Shown piece by piece: positions 4,733 through 47,487 of a stretch of DNA of 64,000 nucleotides. The notes beneath the pieces are model-generated. The model searched no databases. It was not told the origin of the DNA and worked only from the letters and a program-made list of their open reading frames with translations. The stretch's first letter is position 1, and each line of letters starts with the position of its first letter. The translations under genes were made by a program, and so were the position numbers. The stretch lies in IMG/VR virus record IMGVR_UViG_3300030339_000003, positions 124,001 through 188,000 of that record; one strand, given 5' to 3'.

Positions 4733-4836
4733 TTTAAACTCCATTGTTTTACAATTGTTTGATTATTTGATATTACATTCGAATGTATTACATATAGATA
4801 CTATCGCAATTAAATAATATTTATTGTTTATACACT

Positions 4837-4856
4837 TAAGTAATATAGACTTGAAA
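4837..4856 (-). promoter_or_regulatory. early (virion RNAP) promoter, TATATTAC motif, for chmA
   Basis: Minus strand TTTCAAGTCTATATTACTTA; TATATTAC is the reported phiKZ early promoter core. Confidence 0.8.
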
Positions 4857-11161: not shown

Positions 11162-11191
11162 ATACTACTAGGGCGTTAGCCCTAGTAGTAT
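11162..11191 (-). terminator. terminator after phuZ
   Basis: ATACTACTAGGGC/GCCCTAGTAGTAT hairpin, T-tract on minus strand. Confidence 0.75.
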
Positions 11192-11214: not shown

Positions 11215-12198
11215 TTAGAAGCAGCTACCGTCTTCGTTAGCATCATCGCTGAAGTCGTCTTGCTTAACAAAAGTAGAACGAGAGTTCTGTGACGATTTTT
11301 CCAGTTCGTCCAGTTCATGTTTTACTTTTTCTACTGCTTCGCCGTGATCCAGGGTCAACACGATAGTACTGTCGGATGGTGGGTTGTTATCAAGGTTGAT
11401 AATACCCGTTGCACGATAACCTGCGCCTTCAAAAATGGTCTTCACGTTTTCACGGCTGTCATGCAGCGAGCAATACGCTACTGGCGGTTTGCCGGTAAAA
11501 TCGGCCAGATACTTTTCGTTGAAGAAATTGATTTCAGACAGCGCTGGCGGCAGGCCGGTAACTTTTGAGTATTGAAGCAAATTAACGATGTCTTCAAAGT
11601 CCAGACCTTCGTTTGATTCGGTCAGGAACAGAGAAAGGTAATTGATTTCGTTGACGGCTTCTTTGTTTACTTCGCCCCAGGTTTTATCAGACGTGTTGTT
11701 AACGCGAATGAACGGGATGACTTTGCCCAGGTAGCGTTGTTGAGTTTGGTTAGCGTAAGACTGCAACACTTTAACCGAGTTACGACGTTCTACCAGTGAG
11801 CTGAAATCAGATACCAGAACCAGAACAGCCGGAACACCTTTGCTGATCAGATAACGCATTGTTGCTAACGTCAGACCAGAACCAGAACCGCCCGCACCAG
11901 AACCAATGACAATAACAAATTTGCCAGGTTTATGTTTACGGAAAGTTTCGCCGATGAATGGAGACATATGCTCGTAGTTGAGCGTGATATCTTTACCACT
12001 ACCCTGCGCTTTTTCGCCAGGAGCGCGAGTTGAATTCATGTGTTCCAGTGGGAACATATTATCGGTCGGGTTGGAATCAGAAGTATCCAGTGCCAGATAA
12101 GATGCTTCTTTAATGATTTTAGTACCAGGCATAGCCAGCAGATCTTTACCAATGTTAATACCAGTACCGCCGCAAAGTACGATCTGTAATTCTGACAT
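11215..12198 (-). CDS. phuZ: PhuZ tubulin (phage spindle)
   Basis: GGTGINIG, GSGK and GSGAGGSGSG tubulin/FtsZ signature loops, GLDFED T7-loop-like segment, acidic C-tail, 327 aa. Confidence 0.93.
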   Translation of the reverse strand: MSELQIVLCGGTGINIGKDLLAMPGTKIIKEASYLALDTSDSNPTDNMFPLEHMNSTRAPGEKAQGSGKDITLNYEHMSPFIGETFRKHKPGKFVIVIGSGAGGSGSGLTLATMRYLISKGVPAVLVLVSDFSSLVERRNSVKVLQSYANQTQQRYLGKVIPFIRVNNTSDKTWGEVNKEAVNEINYLSLFLTESNEGLDFEDIVNLLQYSKVTGLPPALSEINFFNEKYLADFTGKPPVAYCSLHDSRENVKTIFEGAGYRATGIINLDNNPPSDSTIVLTLDHGEAVEKVKHELDELEKSSQNSRSTFVKQDDFSDDANEDGSCF

Positions 12199-12269
12199 GT
12201 TACTACTCCATTGTTGTTTAAAGGACTTACTTATACAATTAAGAAAAGATTATGAATACAACTAACACC

Positions 12270-12289
12270 TAAGTAATATAGGTCTGAAA
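12270..12289 (-). promoter_or_regulatory. early promoter (TATATTAC) for phuZ
   Basis: Minus strand TTTCAGACCTATATTACTTA. Confidence 0.8.
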
Positions 12290-12330
12290 TTATAACGCTT
12301 ACTTAAAAATACAAAAAAATAAATAGGTGT

Positions 12331-12358
12331 TAGTCTAACCGCCTCAGCGGTTAGACTA
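12331..12358 (-). terminator. terminator closing the RNA island
   Basis: TAGTCTAACCGC/GCGGTTAGACTA perfect stem, T-rich tract on minus strand. Confidence 0.75.
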
Positions 12359-12362
12359 TTAA

Positions 12363-13319
12363 ATCCCCAGAAGGTTCATTGTATTCGGAATCCTAGGATG
12401 GCGCAATGCCAATCAATATATTTCTTACGGCGTAGCGGCCGAGGATGCGCTGGTTTTAATACTTCCGAACTGGGGATGAGTTCATTGGAAGATTCGGTAT
12501 ATGTTAAACCTTTAATGGTAGCTACCACAAGATTAAACATCGTAAGTTGGGTTAGAAAGAATTTACCGGTTGAGGGTAAACGTAATATAAGAAACATTGT
12601 TACCCTCCATTTGGAATATCATTTAGAGTGAAGCATTGTGTACAAGTCAAGAGCATATCACATCGGAGGCTGCCCGATGTACGCTTCATTGGCTTACTGT
12701 TATAGCCCGTTAATCTTCCATAACGCGACGCGTCGCAACAAGAAGTTCTTTAACCGGCATGTGTGGCTCTTATTGGTACCGGATATACCGGCGGTGGTGT
12801 CCACGAGCTACCAACGTGTCTCGTCGGTGTGCTTACACAATACCCACTCTAAATGATACTAAAGCAGGTCAACTATCCTTGTTGACCTTTACTTTTATTA
12901 CAGGCTGTTTACGACAAGGCAAAAGAACGCTCACGCTGACAGGGATGAGGTTCGGTAAGTATTTGATTTACTTAACGAACATCACTTTACATAAAGGTTG
13001 ATATTGCAGTGAGAAATTATTAGTGTCTGCTAGGGGCATAGGGGTGAAAGTCCCGTTCCCATTTTCTATTCTTGTTGTTCCCACACAGACCGATGGGCAA
13101 GCAGTTTTCACTTCGGGAGAAGCAAACTTTTATCGTTGCAACGCGATAAATCTTTAATAAGGTGTAAGGTATTCAATAACTTTATCGAGTTTGGTTGTCA
13201 ATAGACGTTTCAATTAAAAACTGAGTTTCAGTTACTGGTACCTTACATAAAGAGTATTTGCAAAACAGATCGACGGTTAACAATGCGAGGTGACACCCTT
13301 AATGATCTGTTTCACAAAT
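12363..13319. ncRNA. putative large structured non-coding RNA or RNA cluster (unassigned)
   Basis: No convincing CDS; nested long-range helices, e.g. 12617-12630/12845-12858 (14 bp perfect), 12635-42/12834-41, 12363-70/12470-77, 13163-71/13239-47, 13263-71/13304-12. Confidence 0.6.
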
Positions 13320-13320
13320 T

Positions 13321-13430
13321 TGGTAGGAAGTGAAGGATTCGAACCTCCGCGCTGTCCAGTATAGCCGTGGCCATACCTTCAAGCGACAACACTTATTATG
13401 TTGGGGCTTCGGCCTCTCGCCCAACTTCCT
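13321..13430 (-). tRNA. atypical 110-nt tRNA-like RNA with very long variable arm (anticodon position ATA)
   Basis: Acceptor AGGAAGT/ACTTCCT-A-CCA, D arm GGC/GCC, CAACA-TAATAAG-TGTTG, 38-nt variable region, T arm GGAGG-TTCGAAT-CCTTC. Confidence 0.75.
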
Positions 13431-13434
13431 ATAA

Positions 13435-13521
13435 TAGTGACCAAGGTTGGAGTCGAACCAACGTACACACTTTGGTGTAACTCTATTTAAGAGTAAGATG
13501 AGCCGTTCTCTTTTCTTGATC
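13435..13521 (-). tRNA. degenerate tRNA-like RNA / pseudo-tRNA
   Basis: Acceptor GATCAAG/CTTGGTC, T arm GTTGG-TTCGACT-CCAAC, variable-arm hairpin TACAC/GTGTA, aberrant anticodon arm, ends A-CTA. Confidence 0.6.
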
Positions 13522-13531
13522 TGAATTAGTA

Positions 13532-13992: not shown

Positions 13993-14077
13993 TGGTACGA
14001 GGGATGGGAATCGAACCCACATGATCGAAATCGAGGGATTTTAAATCCCTTGCGTCTACCTATTTCGCCACCCTCGC
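13993..14077 (-). tRNA. tRNA-Leu(UAA)
   Basis: Full cloverleaf GCGAGGG...AGGGA-TT TAA AA-TCCCT, type II variable arm, TTCGATT loop, A discriminator, encoded CCA. Confidence 0.96.
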
Positions 14078-14351: not shown

Positions 14352-14427
14352 TGGCGACCCTAGCAGGACTCGAACCTGCGACATATGGATTAACAGTCCA
14401 CCGTTCTACCAACTGAACTATAAGGTC
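14352..14427 (-). tRNA. tRNA-Asn(GUU)
   Basis: 76-nt cloverleaf GACCTTA...GTGGA-CT GTT AA-TCCAT...TTCGAGT...G-CCA. Confidence 0.96.
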
Positions 14428-16205: not shown

Positions 16206-16326
16206 ATCTTTAACCCTTATTAAAAATAATTAAAATAAACGATACAACTTATAAGTGTTTTGGTAAAAAATTAAATACTGCTAACTACCGTACCCTAGGG
16301 TACGGTAGTTATACGCCGATCAGATA

Positions 16327-17682: not shown

Positions 17683-17746
17683 TGCGAAGTTTCCTTTTGG
17701 TTTAATATGATTGAGGTTATACAACTGAGTAATATAGTGTTGAGAT

Positions 17747-18583: not shown

Positions 18584-18640
18584 GATATATATTCCTGGTT
18601 TAAAATAATTCAAAAGGTTAAACATTATTGTTTATACTCT

Positions 18641-18660
18641 TAGGTAATATAGGTCTGAAA
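18641..18660 (-). promoter_or_regulatory. early promoter (TATATTAC)
   Basis: Minus strand TTTCAGACCTATATTACCTA. Confidence 0.8.
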
Positions 18661-30720: not shown

Positions 30721-30756
30721 AACTACTACTACTCCCTTGCGGGAGTAGTAGTAGTT
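30721..30756. terminator. bidirectional terminator
   Basis: 16-bp perfect stem AACTACTACTACTCCC-TTGC-GGGAGTAGTAGTAGTT between convergent genes. Confidence 0.8.
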
Positions 30757-43590: not shown

Positions 43591-43620
43591 ATAACTCCTA
43601 CCCGTGAGGGTAGGAGTTAT
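43591..43620. terminator. bidirectional terminator (repeat family)
   Basis: ATAACTCCTACCC-GTGA-GGGTAGGAGTTAT. Confidence 0.8.
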
Positions 43621-44283: not shown

Positions 44284-44326
44284 GGCACATATCCTTATAA
44301 AGTTTAACAGCTAAGTTTACTACTCC

Positions 44327-44346
44327 TAAGTAATATAGATTTAAAA
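44327..44346 (-). promoter_or_regulatory. early promoter (TATATTAC)
   Basis: Minus strand TTTAAATCTATATTACTTA. Confidence 0.75.
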
Positions 44347-45945: not shown

Positions 45946-46035
45946 GAGGATTTCCTTTAGATTAACGGTTGAATTAATAAAGACAAAACAGAGGTAGCAG
46001 TCGCATCCTCTTGAACTCTTGTTCGTTGTGTCACC

Positions 46036-46055
46036 TAAGTAATATAGGTTTGAAA
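46036..46055 (-). promoter_or_regulatory. early promoter (TATATTAC)
   Basis: Minus strand TTTCAAACCTATATTACTTA. Confidence 0.8.
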
Positions 46056-46111: not shown

Positions 46112-46143
46112 TACTACTCCTACCCGCAAGGGTAGGAGTAGTA
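46112..46143 (-). terminator. terminator (repeat family)
   Basis: TACTACTCCTACCC-GCAA-GGGTAGGAGTAGTA. Confidence 0.8.
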
Positions 46144-47363: not shown

Positions 47364-47467
47364 ATATTGTCCTTTACCTAAGTTGATTAAATTGACTAAG
47401 TTAATTGTCCACAATATACTTAATCGTGTAACATTTCATTCACATAGAAATAAATGTTGGACACTCT

Positions 47468-47487
47468 TAAGTAATATAGACTTATAA
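47468..47487 (-). promoter_or_regulatory. early promoter (TATATTAC)
   Basis: Minus strand TTATAAGTCTATATTACTTA. Confidence 0.75.

What the first reader, a model, noticed from the sequence alone, without database searches (positions are those of the whole stretch)
12617..12858. 242-nt multibranch RNA domain closed by a perfect 14-bp helix
TATCATTTAGAGTG (12617-30) is the exact reverse complement of CACTCTAAATGATA (12845-58). It continues inward with ATTGTGTA/TACACAAT and encloses AAGAGC/GCTCTT, ACATCGG/CCGATGT, GGCT/AGCC, GTTAA/TTAAC, a GCGACGCGTCGC palindrome and CCGG/CCGG. This nesting looks like one folded RNA, not a terminator. G-U extensions favour the plus strand, antisense to the tRNAs (inference).
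Basis: seen in the sequence. Interest (0 to 1): 0.75.

Follow-up and report, generated by a model that had tools for sequence, protein, structure and literature searches.

The report
Structured RNA beside jumbo-phage tRNAs
A 242-base stretch next to the tRNA genes of an uncultured, tubulin-encoding giant phage folds into a conserved multi-hairpin RNA; it is read from the same strand as the genes, not the opposite one, it matches no described RNA family, and its job is unknown.

Summary
The exact 14-bp inverted repeat lies at 12617-30/12845-58 and closes a 242-nt multibranch fold.

The strand call is wrong. The RNA is on the window's minus strand, the sense strand of the tRNAs, phuZ and every neighbouring gene.
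- Single-sequence folding gives -91.3 kcal/mol (z -6.0) on minus and -82.1 (z -4.0) on plus.
- In eight distinct natural variants (83-100% identical), the same 81 pairs are 99.1% paired read as minus-sense and 89.2% as plus-sense.
- Eleven pairs vary only through G-U wobbles that work on the minus strand. Two do so on the plus strand.
- Four pairs show double compensatory changes.

The window is part of a 231-kb PhuZ-encoding jumbo phage known only from metagenomes. The element sits between a conserved hairpin and the ribosome-binding site of a conserved 73-aa gene, just upstream of phuZ.

It is single-copy and absent from bacterial genomes and IMG/VR. It has no Rfam match and no conserved ORF.

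More distant relatives carry, in the same slot, unrelated-looking 210-230-nt domains. These are also closed by 24-33-bp stalks and have their own early-type promoter.

Best reading: a lineage-specific structured non-coding RNA or leader with an RNase III-type stalk. Its function is unknown.

The parts
12617..12858 (-). The 242-nt structured RNA domain. It has a closing stem P1 and five branches.
   Evidence: MFE is -91.3 kcal/mol, z -6.0. The consensus of 13 sequences (8 distinct) has 81 pairs and -84.8 kcal/mol. 99.1% of cells are paired. CM R1 scores 255.7 bits on minus and 29.2 on plus.
12835..12858 (-). 5' strand of closing stem P1 (alignment columns 1-24).
   Evidence: It pairs with 12617-12641: 24 bp with one bulge, comprising the 14 exact pairs plus G-U, G-C and U-A/U-G pairs. 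The 5' strand is invariant in all variants.
12617..12641 (-). 3' strand of closing stem P1 (alignment columns 221-245).
   Evidence: There is one variable site (column 228, A or G), and it stays paired with U17. The strand ends 8 nt before the Shine-Dalgarno of the 73-aa ORF.
12778..12833 (-). Hairpins P2, P3 and P4, in the almost invariant 5' half of the domain.
   Evidence: Columns 26-81. Three one-sided changes all keep pairing: C-G/U-G, G-C/G-U and G-U/G-C. This part is 95-100% identical among variants.
12759..12777 (-). Conserved unpaired stretch ACCAAUAAGAGCCACACAU.
   Evidence: Columns 82-100 are invariant except column 93. No convincing complementary target was found at translation start regions of the phage genome.
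12705..12758 (-). Long hairpin P5/P6. Its tip is the GCGAC..GUCGC palindrome.
   Evidence: Columns 101-154. 96.9% and 98.8% of cells are paired, with four one-sided wobble changes.
12642..12697 (-). Long hairpin P7/P8. This is the fast-evolving part.
   Evidence: Columns 162-220. It is 72-99% identical among variants while phuZ DNA is 93-97% identical. It holds all four double compensatory changes: 166-216, 168-215, 181-204 and 184-198.
12866..12888 (-). Conserved hairpin AGGUCAAC-AAGGAUA-GUUGACCU, 7 nt upstream of the domain.
   Evidence: It is flagged as terminator-like. Every relative has it, with the loop A-N-R-GGAU-N and covarying stems. In L017 one A-to-G change gives a U-G pair on the minus-sense strand.
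12376..12608 (-). Shine-Dalgarno GGAGGG (12603-12608) and a conserved 73-aa ORF directly downstream.
   Evidence: The ORF is listed and translated. It is 97-99% identical in protein in most close variants at about 96% DNA identity, and 92% in L017. Its homologues in relatives are 39-54% identical in protein and share the C-terminal motif W-x-x-A-I-x-G-F-R. The SD is predicted to pair with codons 7-10.
12331..12358 (-). Intrinsic-terminator-like hairpin with a T-run that ends the unit.
   Evidence: A 12-bp perfect inverted repeat is followed by TTTATTTTTTT on the minus strand.
12266..12281 (-). Phage promoter motif CTATATTACTTAGGTG in front of phuZ. It is a context marker for the transcribed strand.
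   Evidence: The motif matches 7 times in the window, all on the minus strand, against 0.69 expected. It agrees with the published early-promoter consensus of phiKZ-like phages (PMC7058600).
13993..14427 (-). tRNA-Leu(UAA) and tRNA-Asn(GUU) upstream, on the same strand.
   Evidence: ARAGORN and Rfam.

Best explanation
The interval encodes a structured non-coding RNA of about 242 nt. It is read from the window's minus strand, the same strand as the tRNAs, the 73-aa gene and phuZ. It lies in the tRNA and small-RNA island of an uncultured PhuZ-encoding jumbo phage.

Shown:
- The fold exists, and its pairs are kept by selection at the RNA level on that strand.
- It is a single-copy, lineage-specific element.
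- Relatives carry an analogous stalk-closed domain in the same slot.

Inferred:
- The RNA is made as part of a longer sense transcript. No promoter is recognisable between the upstream hairpin and the stem.
- The 24-bp, almost perfect closing stalk is long enough to be a host RNase III substrate. It serves as a processing and closure element, as the stalks around pre-rRNAs or the T7 early-RNA sites do.
- Cleavage would release a compact multi-hairpin stable RNA and give the downstream 73-aa mRNA a new 5' end.
- The nearly invariant 5' half (P2-P4 plus the 19-nt unpaired stretch) would be the working surface, for example for binding a protein. The 3' hairpin P7/P8 would need only its shape.

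The molecular target is unknown.
For: - Fold: -91.3 kcal/mol, z -6.0.
- Variants: eight distinct natural variants from independent metagenomes.
- Consensus structure: 81 pairs, -84.8 kcal/mol minus-sense against -63.2 plus-sense.
- Pairing: 99.1% against 89.2% of cells paired for the same pairs.
- Wobble direction: 11 pairs vary by wobble-preserving single changes on the minus-sense strand against 2 on the plus-sense strand. My binomial estimate from those tables is p about 0.01.
- Compensation: four pairs have changes on both sides.
- Column variability: 15% of paired columns vary (24/162) against 41% of unpaired columns (34/83).
- No conserved ORF.
- Context on the same strand: tRNAs, the 73-aa ORF, a terminator, and promoter motifs found only on the minus strand.
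- Same slot in relatives (PhuZ 54-60% identical): 210-230-nt domains closed by 24-33-bp stalks with invariant G-U pairs and covarying pairs. They are preceded by the early-promoter motif, and in L010 followed by a terminator.
- Not a repeat or mobile element: one copy in the genome, and none in 185,579 species genomes or in IMG/VR.
Against: - No expression data exist, so no 5' or 3' ends are known.
- No promoter motif lies in front of the element in this lineage.
- The upstream hairpin looks like a terminator, which would argue against read-through.
- The outer 14 bp of the stalk never vary, so they give no covariation evidence either way.
- Only eight closely related sequences are available, so most support comes from wobble changes and from one swapped hairpin rather than from many independent compensatory events.
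- L004, the next-closest relative (PhuZ 71%), has only an 11-bp AT hairpin at this place, so the element is dispensable in that lineage.
- Homology with the domains of the other relatives could not be shown.
- RNase III cleavage is an inference from helix length only. The phage encodes no RNase III of its own.
Confidence: 0.5

Rival explanations
1. It is a cis-acting 5' leader of the 73-aa gene. The domain is not a separate RNA but the structured 5' untranslated region of that mRNA. It would set the mRNA's stability or its translation, for example by binding the gene's own product or another factor next to the sequestered Shine-Dalgarno.
For: - The 3' strand of the stalk ends 8 nt before the SD, with no terminator in between.
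- In every lineage that has the 73-aa gene, a structured element sits directly upstream of it.
- The SD is predicted to pair with codons 7-10, and those segments are conserved. That looks like a translational switch.
Against: - A 24-bp stalk is far too stable to act as a switching P1 helix.
- In L010 a strong terminator separates the analogous domain from the gene, so there the RNA is its own unit.
- The leader differs completely between lineages while the protein is conserved.
- L004 has no such domain.
- The protein has no recognisable RNA-binding fold. Its model had a mean pLDDT of 56.6 and was uninformative.
Confidence: 0.28
2. It is a miniature inverted-repeat transposable element or another DNA-level palindromic insertion. 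Its terminal inverted repeats (TCATTTAGAGTG...) and a TA target duplication would mark an IS630/mariner-type MITE that landed between a terminator and a gene.
For: - It has perfect 14-bp terminal inverted repeats whose outermost TA/TA could be a target duplication.
- It is present in this lineage and absent at the same spot in L004.
- Its size is typical of MITEs.
Against: - There is one copy only in the 231-kb genome, with no stray arms.
- The terminal-repeat pattern and a 26-nt core have no match in 185,579 species genomes or in IMG/VR.
- The substitution pattern is strand-asymmetric, 11 against 2 wobble-type changes, as expected for RNA and not for DNA symmetry.
- Internal helices are kept by compensation.
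- The genome has no reverse transcriptase. A transposase was not searched for.
Confidence: 0.07
3. It is a plus-strand RNA, antisense to the tRNA and gene strand.
For: - The plus strand also folds better than shuffles: -82.1 kcal/mol, z -4.0.
- The inverted repeat places the promoter-like words TATCATTTAGAGTG at both ends pointing inward. The resemblance to the promoter motif is by eye only.
Against: - The consensus energy is 21.7 kcal/mol worse than on the minus strand.
- 70 of 648 cells are unpaired, against 6 for the mirror structure.
- All promoter motifs and genes of the region are on the minus strand.
Confidence: 0.05
4. It is non-functional structured spacer. On this view it is a fortuitous palindrome-rich intergenic remnant, for example decayed promoter and terminator pieces, with no role of its own.
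For: - The element is missing in L004 and is not alignable to the other relatives.
- Its average divergence among close variants is not lower than that of the flanks.
Against: - Paired columns vary much less than unpaired ones.
- Almost every change keeps pairing: 99.1% of cells.
- The 5' 100 nt are 95-100% identical.
- z -6.0.
- The slot holds a stalk-closed domain in five other lineages.
Confidence: 0.08

Closest known systems
Stalk-closed domains in the same slot of related metagenomic jumbo phages (L005/L006/L012 type, L010/L016 type, L015)
   Same: - The position is the same: after the conserved ANGGAU-loop hairpin and before the 73-aa gene and phuZ.
- The size is similar, 210-230 nt.
- They have the same architecture: a 24-33-bp closing stalk with sense-strand G-U pairs and a multibranch interior.
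- They are strongly stable, -75 to -111 kcal/mol.

   Different: - No detectable sequence or covariance-model similarity to the window's element (global alignment z 0-2).
- They have their own early-type promoter, and in L010 a terminator, both of which the window's element lacks.
Stable RNAs of unknown function in the phage T4 tRNA gene region (species 1 and 2 RNAs, rnaC/rnaD). This comparison rests on my own knowledge and was not tested against their sequences.
   Same: Both are small stable non-coding RNAs encoded beside a tRNA cluster of a large lytic phage. They are on the tRNA strand, have no known role, and sit in a region that also attracts homing-endonuclease genes.
   Different: - No sequence similarity to any GenBank phage, T4 included.
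- The element is larger (242 nt) and closed by a long stalk.
- Its expression is unproven.
RNase III processing stalks (pre-16S/23S rRNA stems, T7 early-RNA sites). This comparison rests on established knowledge of RNase III substrates.
   Same: A near-perfect double helix of two or more turns (24 bp), formed by the sequences flanking a structured RNA inside a probable polycistronic transcript.
   Different: - Cleavage is not shown.
- No RNase III gene is in the phage.
- The enclosed RNA is not an rRNA.
Large phage-associated ncRNAs found near tRNAs (GOLLD, ROOL) and other Rfam phage motifs
   Same: Complex multi-stem RNA in a phage genome next to tRNA genes, with unknown function.
   Different: - No match to any of 4227 Rfam models, even at E up to 10 on a 1.3-kb search.
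- It is much smaller than GOLLD or ROOL.
MITEs transcribed into RNase III-cleaved hairpins (for example Neisseria Correia elements). This comparison rests on my own knowledge.
   Same: Terminal inverted repeats starting with TA, an intergenic position next to a gene start, and a long hairpin once transcribed.
   Different: - It is single-copy, with no copies in any searched genome.
- It has a conserved multibranch interior with RNA-type compensation.

Membership tests
Any Rfam family (tRNA, tmRNA, RNase P, 6S, group I/II introns, riboswitches, GOLLD/ROOL, ribozymes, phage motifs) | A score at or near the family's covariance-model threshold. | tested here: not met
   Nothing lies in 12617-12858 at E up to 1 (7 kb searched) or E up to 10 (1.3 kb searched). 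Only the two tRNAs upstream match. The analogous domains of relatives have no match either.
Structured non-coding RNA (generic) | Thermodynamic stability beyond composition. | tested here: met
   z -6.0 on the minus strand, with 0 of 200 shuffles as stable. With flanks the z is -5.4.
Structured non-coding RNA (generic) | Base pairs maintained by compensatory or wobble changes in homologues, on one strand. | tested here: met
   81 pairs with 99.1% of cells paired. 11 pairs have wobble-type single changes and 4 have double changes. The mirror structure on the other strand is 89.2% paired. Caveat: the 8 distinct sequences are closely related.
Structured non-coding RNA (generic) | A discrete transcript covering the interval. 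| not testable with these tools
   No transcriptome data are available. Promoter motifs and genes of the region are all on the minus strand.
MITE (IS630/mariner-type) | Terminal inverted repeats with a target-site duplication. | tested here: inconclusive
   A 14-bp perfect repeat is present. The TA/TA ends could be a duplication or simply part of the repeat. No exact empty site is available, because the flanks of L004 have diverged.
MITE (IS630/mariner-type) | Multiple dispersed copies in a genome or across genomes. | tested here: not met
   One copy in the 231-kb genome. Zero matches for the end pattern or the 26-nt core in 185,579 species genomes and IMG/VR.
Retron msr-msd RNA | A flanking inverted repeat closing the RNA, plus an adjacent reverse transcriptase gene. 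| tested here: not met
   The inverted repeat is present, but no RVT_1 match occurs anywhere in the phage genome. The neighbours are a 73-aa ORF and phuZ.
Y RNA / Ro RNP | An RNA closed by a long terminal stem, together with a Ro (TROVE) protein. | tested here: not met
   No TROVE match in the phage genome. No Rfam Y RNA or YrlA hit. A host-encoded Ro was not examined.
Riboswitch or attenuator leader | An aptamer upstream of a gene, with a P1 or terminator that alternates with an expression platform. | tested here: inconclusive
   The position directly upstream of an SD is met. No alternative pairing between the domain and the SD is predicted: the 24-bp stalk and the SD hairpin fold independently. 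There is no known aptamer match.
RNase III processing stalk | About 22 bp or more of nearly uninterrupted double helix. | tested here: met
   24 pairs with one bulged base in all variants. The analogous domains of relatives have 24-33 bp.
RNase III processing stalk | Staggered cleavage by RNase III in vivo or in vitro. | not testable with these tools
   Needs an enzyme assay or end mapping. The phage has no RNase III gene, so the host enzyme would be required.
Protein-coding gene | An open frame conserved among homologues. | tested here: not met
   The 72-aa plus-strand ORF (12638-12856) carries stops and frameshifts in 7 of 8 variants, and the longest open frame changes strand and frame between variants.

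The most novel reading that the evidence does not exclude
A clade of PhuZ-encoding (nucleus-forming type) jumbo phages keeps a dedicated slot between its tRNA island and phuZ. In that slot each lineage carries a different, fast-evolving RNA of about 210-245 nt, closed by a double-stranded stalk of 24 bp or more. In relatives this RNA is driven by an early promoter. These would be a new class of early phage ncRNAs, for example dsRNA or protein decoys used against host defences or RNases, or RNAs tied to traffic in and out of the phage nucleus. Their interiors would diversify under an arms race while the stalk and the neighbouring 73-aa protein stay constant.
Probability: 0.15. Interest if true: 0.8.

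Novelty: new member of a known kind. Interest (0 to 1): 0.5.

Why it matters
Nucleus-forming jumbo phages are studied intensively for their proteins (chimallin, PhuZ, their own RNA polymerases), but almost nothing is known about their non-coding RNAs. This work gives:
- a strand-resolved, comparatively supported secondary structure for an unannotated RNA next to phuZ;
- a covariance model and a set of natural variants;
- the observation that related phages keep a promoter-driven, stalk-closed RNA in the same place.

Together these turn an anonymous 1.3-kb gap into a concrete candidate ncRNA locus that can be tested in cultured relatives. If the stalk is a processing site, or the RNA is a decoy, it would add an RNA layer to jumbo-phage early gene expression or counter-defence. 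If not, it remains one more well-supported orphan phage RNA motif.

Tried and rejected
- **Rfam.** Four searches of the window and the relatives gave no family for the element.
- **GenBank phages.** blastn at distant sensitivity on the whole 1.3-kb gap found no match.
- **PhuZ single-protein scan of IMG/VR.** Nothing. The alignment-based scans worked but added no new version of the element.
- **Homology with the same-slot domains of relatives.** All four tests failed, so homology is not claimed:
  - blastn found only the flanks;
  - an nhmmer profile of the relatives' domain does not hit the window;
  - CM R1 hits nothing outside the close lineage with default filters, and without filters on L005 (the multi-locus unfiltered run failed);
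  - global alignment z-scores were 0-2.
  A shared 'hairpin + UAUG(C)GGAAG' word is short, sits in different structural contexts, and is treated as chance.
- **MITE idea.** Rejected on copy number and strand-asymmetric substitutions.
- **Retron, Y RNA, phage RNase III.** No RT, TROVE or RNase III gene in the genome.
- **Coding potential.** Rejected.
- **Trans-target search.** The invariant 19-nt unpaired stretch was tested against 547 translation-start regions. The best real hit was -15.2 kcal/mol, against a shuffled-query mean best of -17.2, so there is no candidate.
- **The 73-aa protein.** No Pfam or PHROG family was found and the Atlas search was uninformative. The AlphaFold model was of low confidence (pLDDT 56.6), so no fold search was run.
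- **Promoter idea for the 5' arm.** By eye, TATCATTTAGAGTG resembles a shortened copy of CTATATTACTTAGGTG. It does not match within 3 mismatches, so it is left as a remark.
- **Other long-range inverted repeats of similar span in the window.** They lie inside ORFs and are not unusually stable.
Full report
**What is in the sequence**

The two 14-mers at 12617-12630 and 12845-12858 are exact reverse complements, 214 nt apart. The interval lies in a 1.3-kb gap without credible ORFs, spanning 12199-13531. On one side is a 129-aa ORF with two tRNAs (Leu-UAA at 13993-14077, Asn-GUU at 14352-14427). On the other is a 327-aa tubulin-like gene at 11215-12198. All of these are on the minus strand.

The window is bases 124001-188000 of a 231,366-bp virus record with direct terminal repeats. 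The tubulin is a PhuZ, 39% identical to those of Erwinia phages RisingSun and Joad and about 37% identical to that of Pseudomonas phage EL. The genome is therefore an uncultured PhuZ-encoding jumbo phage.

**Is it more than chance?**

A perfect 14-bp repeat at this distance is only mildly unusual. The window has one other perfect 13-nt long-range pair and three imperfect ones. The two of those that were examined are inside ORFs and fold no better than shuffles.

The interval itself folds far better than shuffles on both strands:
- plus strand: -82.1 kcal/mol, z -4.0;
- minus strand: -91.3 kcal/mol, z -6.0.

With 30-90 nt of flank on each side, the minus-strand fold keeps the same domain (z -5.4).

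**Relatives**

PhuZ homologues were found at 99, 71, 60, 59, 58, 56 and 54% identity, and the DNA around them was fetched. Synteny is conserved: glutaredoxin, tRNAs, a non-coding gap of about 1.2 kb, phuZ, then a run of small genes and the DNA polymerase.

blastn of the gap showed that both flanks of the element are conserved but the element itself is not. The conserved flanks are:
- upstream, a non-coding 'block A';
- downstream, a stretch that is a 73-aa ORF with a Shine-Dalgarno.

Members of the protein clusters of PhuZ and of the 73-aa ORF led to short contigs from independent samples. This gave 13 copies of the element, 8 of them distinct, at 82.8-100% identity. A fourteenth copy, L100, differs from L017 at one position and was not used to build the model. 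It scores 262.9 bits and has 79 of 81 pairs intact.

**Structure and strand**

RNAalifold on the minus-sense alignment gives 81 pairs in eight helices:
- a 24-bp closing stem P1 with one bulge;
- hairpins P2, P3 and P4;
- a 19-nt unpaired stretch;
- a long hairpin P5/P6;
- a long hairpin P7/P8.

The consensus energy is -84.8 kcal/mol. The mirror alignment on the plus-sense strand reaches only -63.2 kcal/mol.

| Measure (same 81 pairs) | Minus-sense | Plus-sense |
|---|---|---|
| Cells that are standard pairs | 99.1% (6 of 648 unpaired) | 89.2% (70 of 648 unpaired) |
| Pairs that vary through one-sided wobble changes | 11 | 2 |

The eleven minus-sense pairs change only through G-C/G-U or A-U/G-U. 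On the opposite strand the same changes are A-C mismatches. If the direction of such transitions were random, 11 of 13 or more has probability about 0.011 (my calculation from the two tables).

Four further pairs change on both sides and stay paired, all in P7/P8. Paired columns vary in 24 of 162 cases and unpaired ones in 34 of 83.

In the stem itself, the pairs that extend the 14-bp core inward (G15-U, U17-G or U17-A) are pairs only on the minus strand.

The plus-strand 72-aa ORF that overlaps the element is broken in 7 of 8 variants.

**Rate pattern**

Among the close variants, phuZ DNA is 93-97% identical to the window. The other segments compare as follows:

| Segment | Identity to the window |
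|---|---|
| About 170 nt upstream of the element | 96-100% (100% in most segments and variants) |
| First 100 nt of the element | 95-100% |
| Positions 101-160 | 75-97% |
| Positions 161-242 | 72-99% |

The 5' half is thus as constrained as its surroundings or more so. The 3' hairpin changes at roughly the neutral rate but keeps its pairs.

**What it is not**

- **No known RNA family.** Rfam has no match, even at permissive thresholds.
- **No GenBank phage homologue.** blastn found no similar DNA.
- **Not a repeat.** There is one copy and no stray arms in the genome. Neither the terminal-repeat pattern nor a 26-nt invariant core occurs in IMG/VR or in one genome for each of 185,579 prokaryote species. 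Together with the strand-asymmetric substitutions, this argues against a MITE, although the TA...TA ends and the absence of the element in L004 fit one superficially.
- **No partner proteins for three RNA classes.** The phage has no reverse transcriptase, Ro/TROVE or RNase III gene.

**The same slot in more distant relatives**

In the phages with PhuZ 54-60% identical, the same place holds a 210-230-nt domain with these features:
- It is closed by a stalk, 5' UUGAUGGA... and 3' ...UUCAUUGA, of 24-33 bp with invariant G-U pairs. The stalk is followed inward by pairs that covary between subtypes, for example GUCCUG/CAGGAC against AUAUCU/AGAUAU.
- It lies after a hairpin with the conserved loop A-N-R-GGAU-N and covarying stems.
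- It lies before the 73-aa gene.
- It is preceded by the motif TTTCA-N4-(C)TATATTAC-TTAGGTG or a close variant.

That motif occurs seven times in the window, only on the minus strand, against 0.69 expected. It agrees with the early-promoter consensus reported for phiKZ-like phages (PMC7058600, Table 2).

In L010 a strong terminator follows the domain. There the domain looks like an independent early ncRNA gene.

The window's element has the same position, size and architecture, but I could not show homology:
- the nhmmer profile of the relatives does not hit the window;
- the covariance model of the window's family hits nothing outside the close lineage;
- global alignment scores are at background.

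The closest outgroup, L004 (PhuZ 71%), has only an 11-bp AT hairpin there. The domains are therefore positional and architectural analogues. Whether they are fast-diverged homologues or replacements stays open.

**How it probably works**

*Shown:* this is an RNA-level structure on the gene strand, kept by selection.

*Inferred:* the following steps.
- In this lineage no promoter motif lies between the upstream hairpin and the stem. The RNA is therefore most simply part of a longer sense transcript that runs from the tRNA/block A region to the terminator at 12358-12331.
- A 24-bp near-perfect helix joining the two ends of a structured RNA inside a polycistronic transcript is the classical layout of RNase III processing stalks. 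This rests on established knowledge of pre-rRNA and T7 early RNA processing.
- A stalk of two helical turns or more is the one feature shared by all lineages.

I therefore favour excision or closure of a compact stable RNA at this stalk, with the invariant 5' half as the functional surface. The main rival is a purely cis-acting leader of the 73-aa gene. The leader's 3' end lies 8 nt from the SD, and the SD is itself predicted to be sequestered by codons 7-10. The stability of the stalk and the terminator in L010 speak against a switching leader.

No trans target was found for the conserved unpaired stretch. The 73-aa protein gave no functional clue.

**Verdict**

The finding is real, and it is a good candidate for a new phage ncRNA motif. 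The strand assignment must be reversed. One of the proposed inner helices (GGCT/AGCC) is contradicted, and one (AAGAGC/GCTCTT) is only an alternative pairing.

The kind of thing is known: an orphan structured RNA beside phage tRNA genes. The family is new and so far confined to one narrow lineage of metagenomic jumbo phages, and the function is unknown. Interest is moderate, and it would rise if the same-slot RNAs of the wider clade prove to be one fast-evolving early ncRNA system.

Noticed in passing
window 12866-12888 (minus); L004-L016 at the corresponding place: A hairpin with the conserved loop A-N-R-GGAU-N and stems that covary in every relative (AGGUCAAC/GUUGACCU, GGGAUAA/UUAUCCC, GGGCC/GGCCC, GGGUC/GACCC). 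It lies just upstream of the element or of the relatives' promoter. It could be a terminator with a conserved loop or a protein-binding site.
   Followed up: partly
window about 12949-13129 (minus), 'block A': This non-coding block is 96-100% identical among close variants and 72-82% identical (blastn) to phages whose PhuZ protein is only 59-60% identical. Its 5' half exists in two unrelated forms: the window, L005, L010 and L016 carry one, and L017 and L014 the other. L008, L009 and L016 carry an 88-92-aa ORF inserted in it. Its 3' half has a covarying hairpin UAAGUA-N7-UACUUA followed by CCGAACC. It is possibly another RNA gene or a target of a mobile element.
   Followed up: partly
window 13437-13521 and 13321-13430 (minus): Two tRNA-like sequences have good acceptor and T arms, and the second ends in CCA. 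ARAGORN calls them only at relaxed thresholds: Phe-AAA at 80%, and Ser with a 10-nt intron. Rfam's tRNA model does not report them. They are probably decayed or aberrant tRNAs.
   Followed up: partly
window 4833-4848, 12266-12281, 17722-17737, 18637-18652, 44323-44338, 46032-46047, 47464-47479 (all minus): The phage promoter motif (TTTCARRY)CTATATTACTTAGGTG occurs seven times, always on the minus strand. It matches the published early-promoter consensus of phiKZ-like phages.
   Followed up: yes
window 12376-12608 (minus): A conserved 73-aa protein of unknown function has the C-terminal motif W-x-x-A-I-x-G-F-R and is restricted to this clade. Its Shine-Dalgarno is predicted to pair with codons 7-10 (UUACCCUC). 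A third conserved segment, GGUAAA, could compete for that pairing, which looks like a translational switch.
   Followed up: partly
L004:1894-2750: In the closest outgroup, the 3' half of tRNA-Leu(UAA) lies right after a 243-aa ORF and no intact tRNA is called. This suggests an insertion, such as a homing-endonuclease-type gene or an intron, into or next to the tRNA gene. L016 has an HNH_3 ORF nearby.
   Followed up: no
window 11162-11191, 16282-16311, 30721-30756, 43591-43620, 46112-46143: These are perfect 13-16-bp hairpins, most with 4-nt loops and related arms (..ACTAC..CCC / GGG..GTAGT..). They are probably this phage's standard intrinsic terminators.
   Followed up: no
L010:7000-7058, L014:7007-7065, L016:6487-6547 (just after phuZ): There are weak, sub-threshold matches to Rfam cow-rumen-4 RNA (29-35 bits against a gathering score of 48.5) at the same place in three relatives. 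This is probably a terminator-like hairpin.
   Followed up: no
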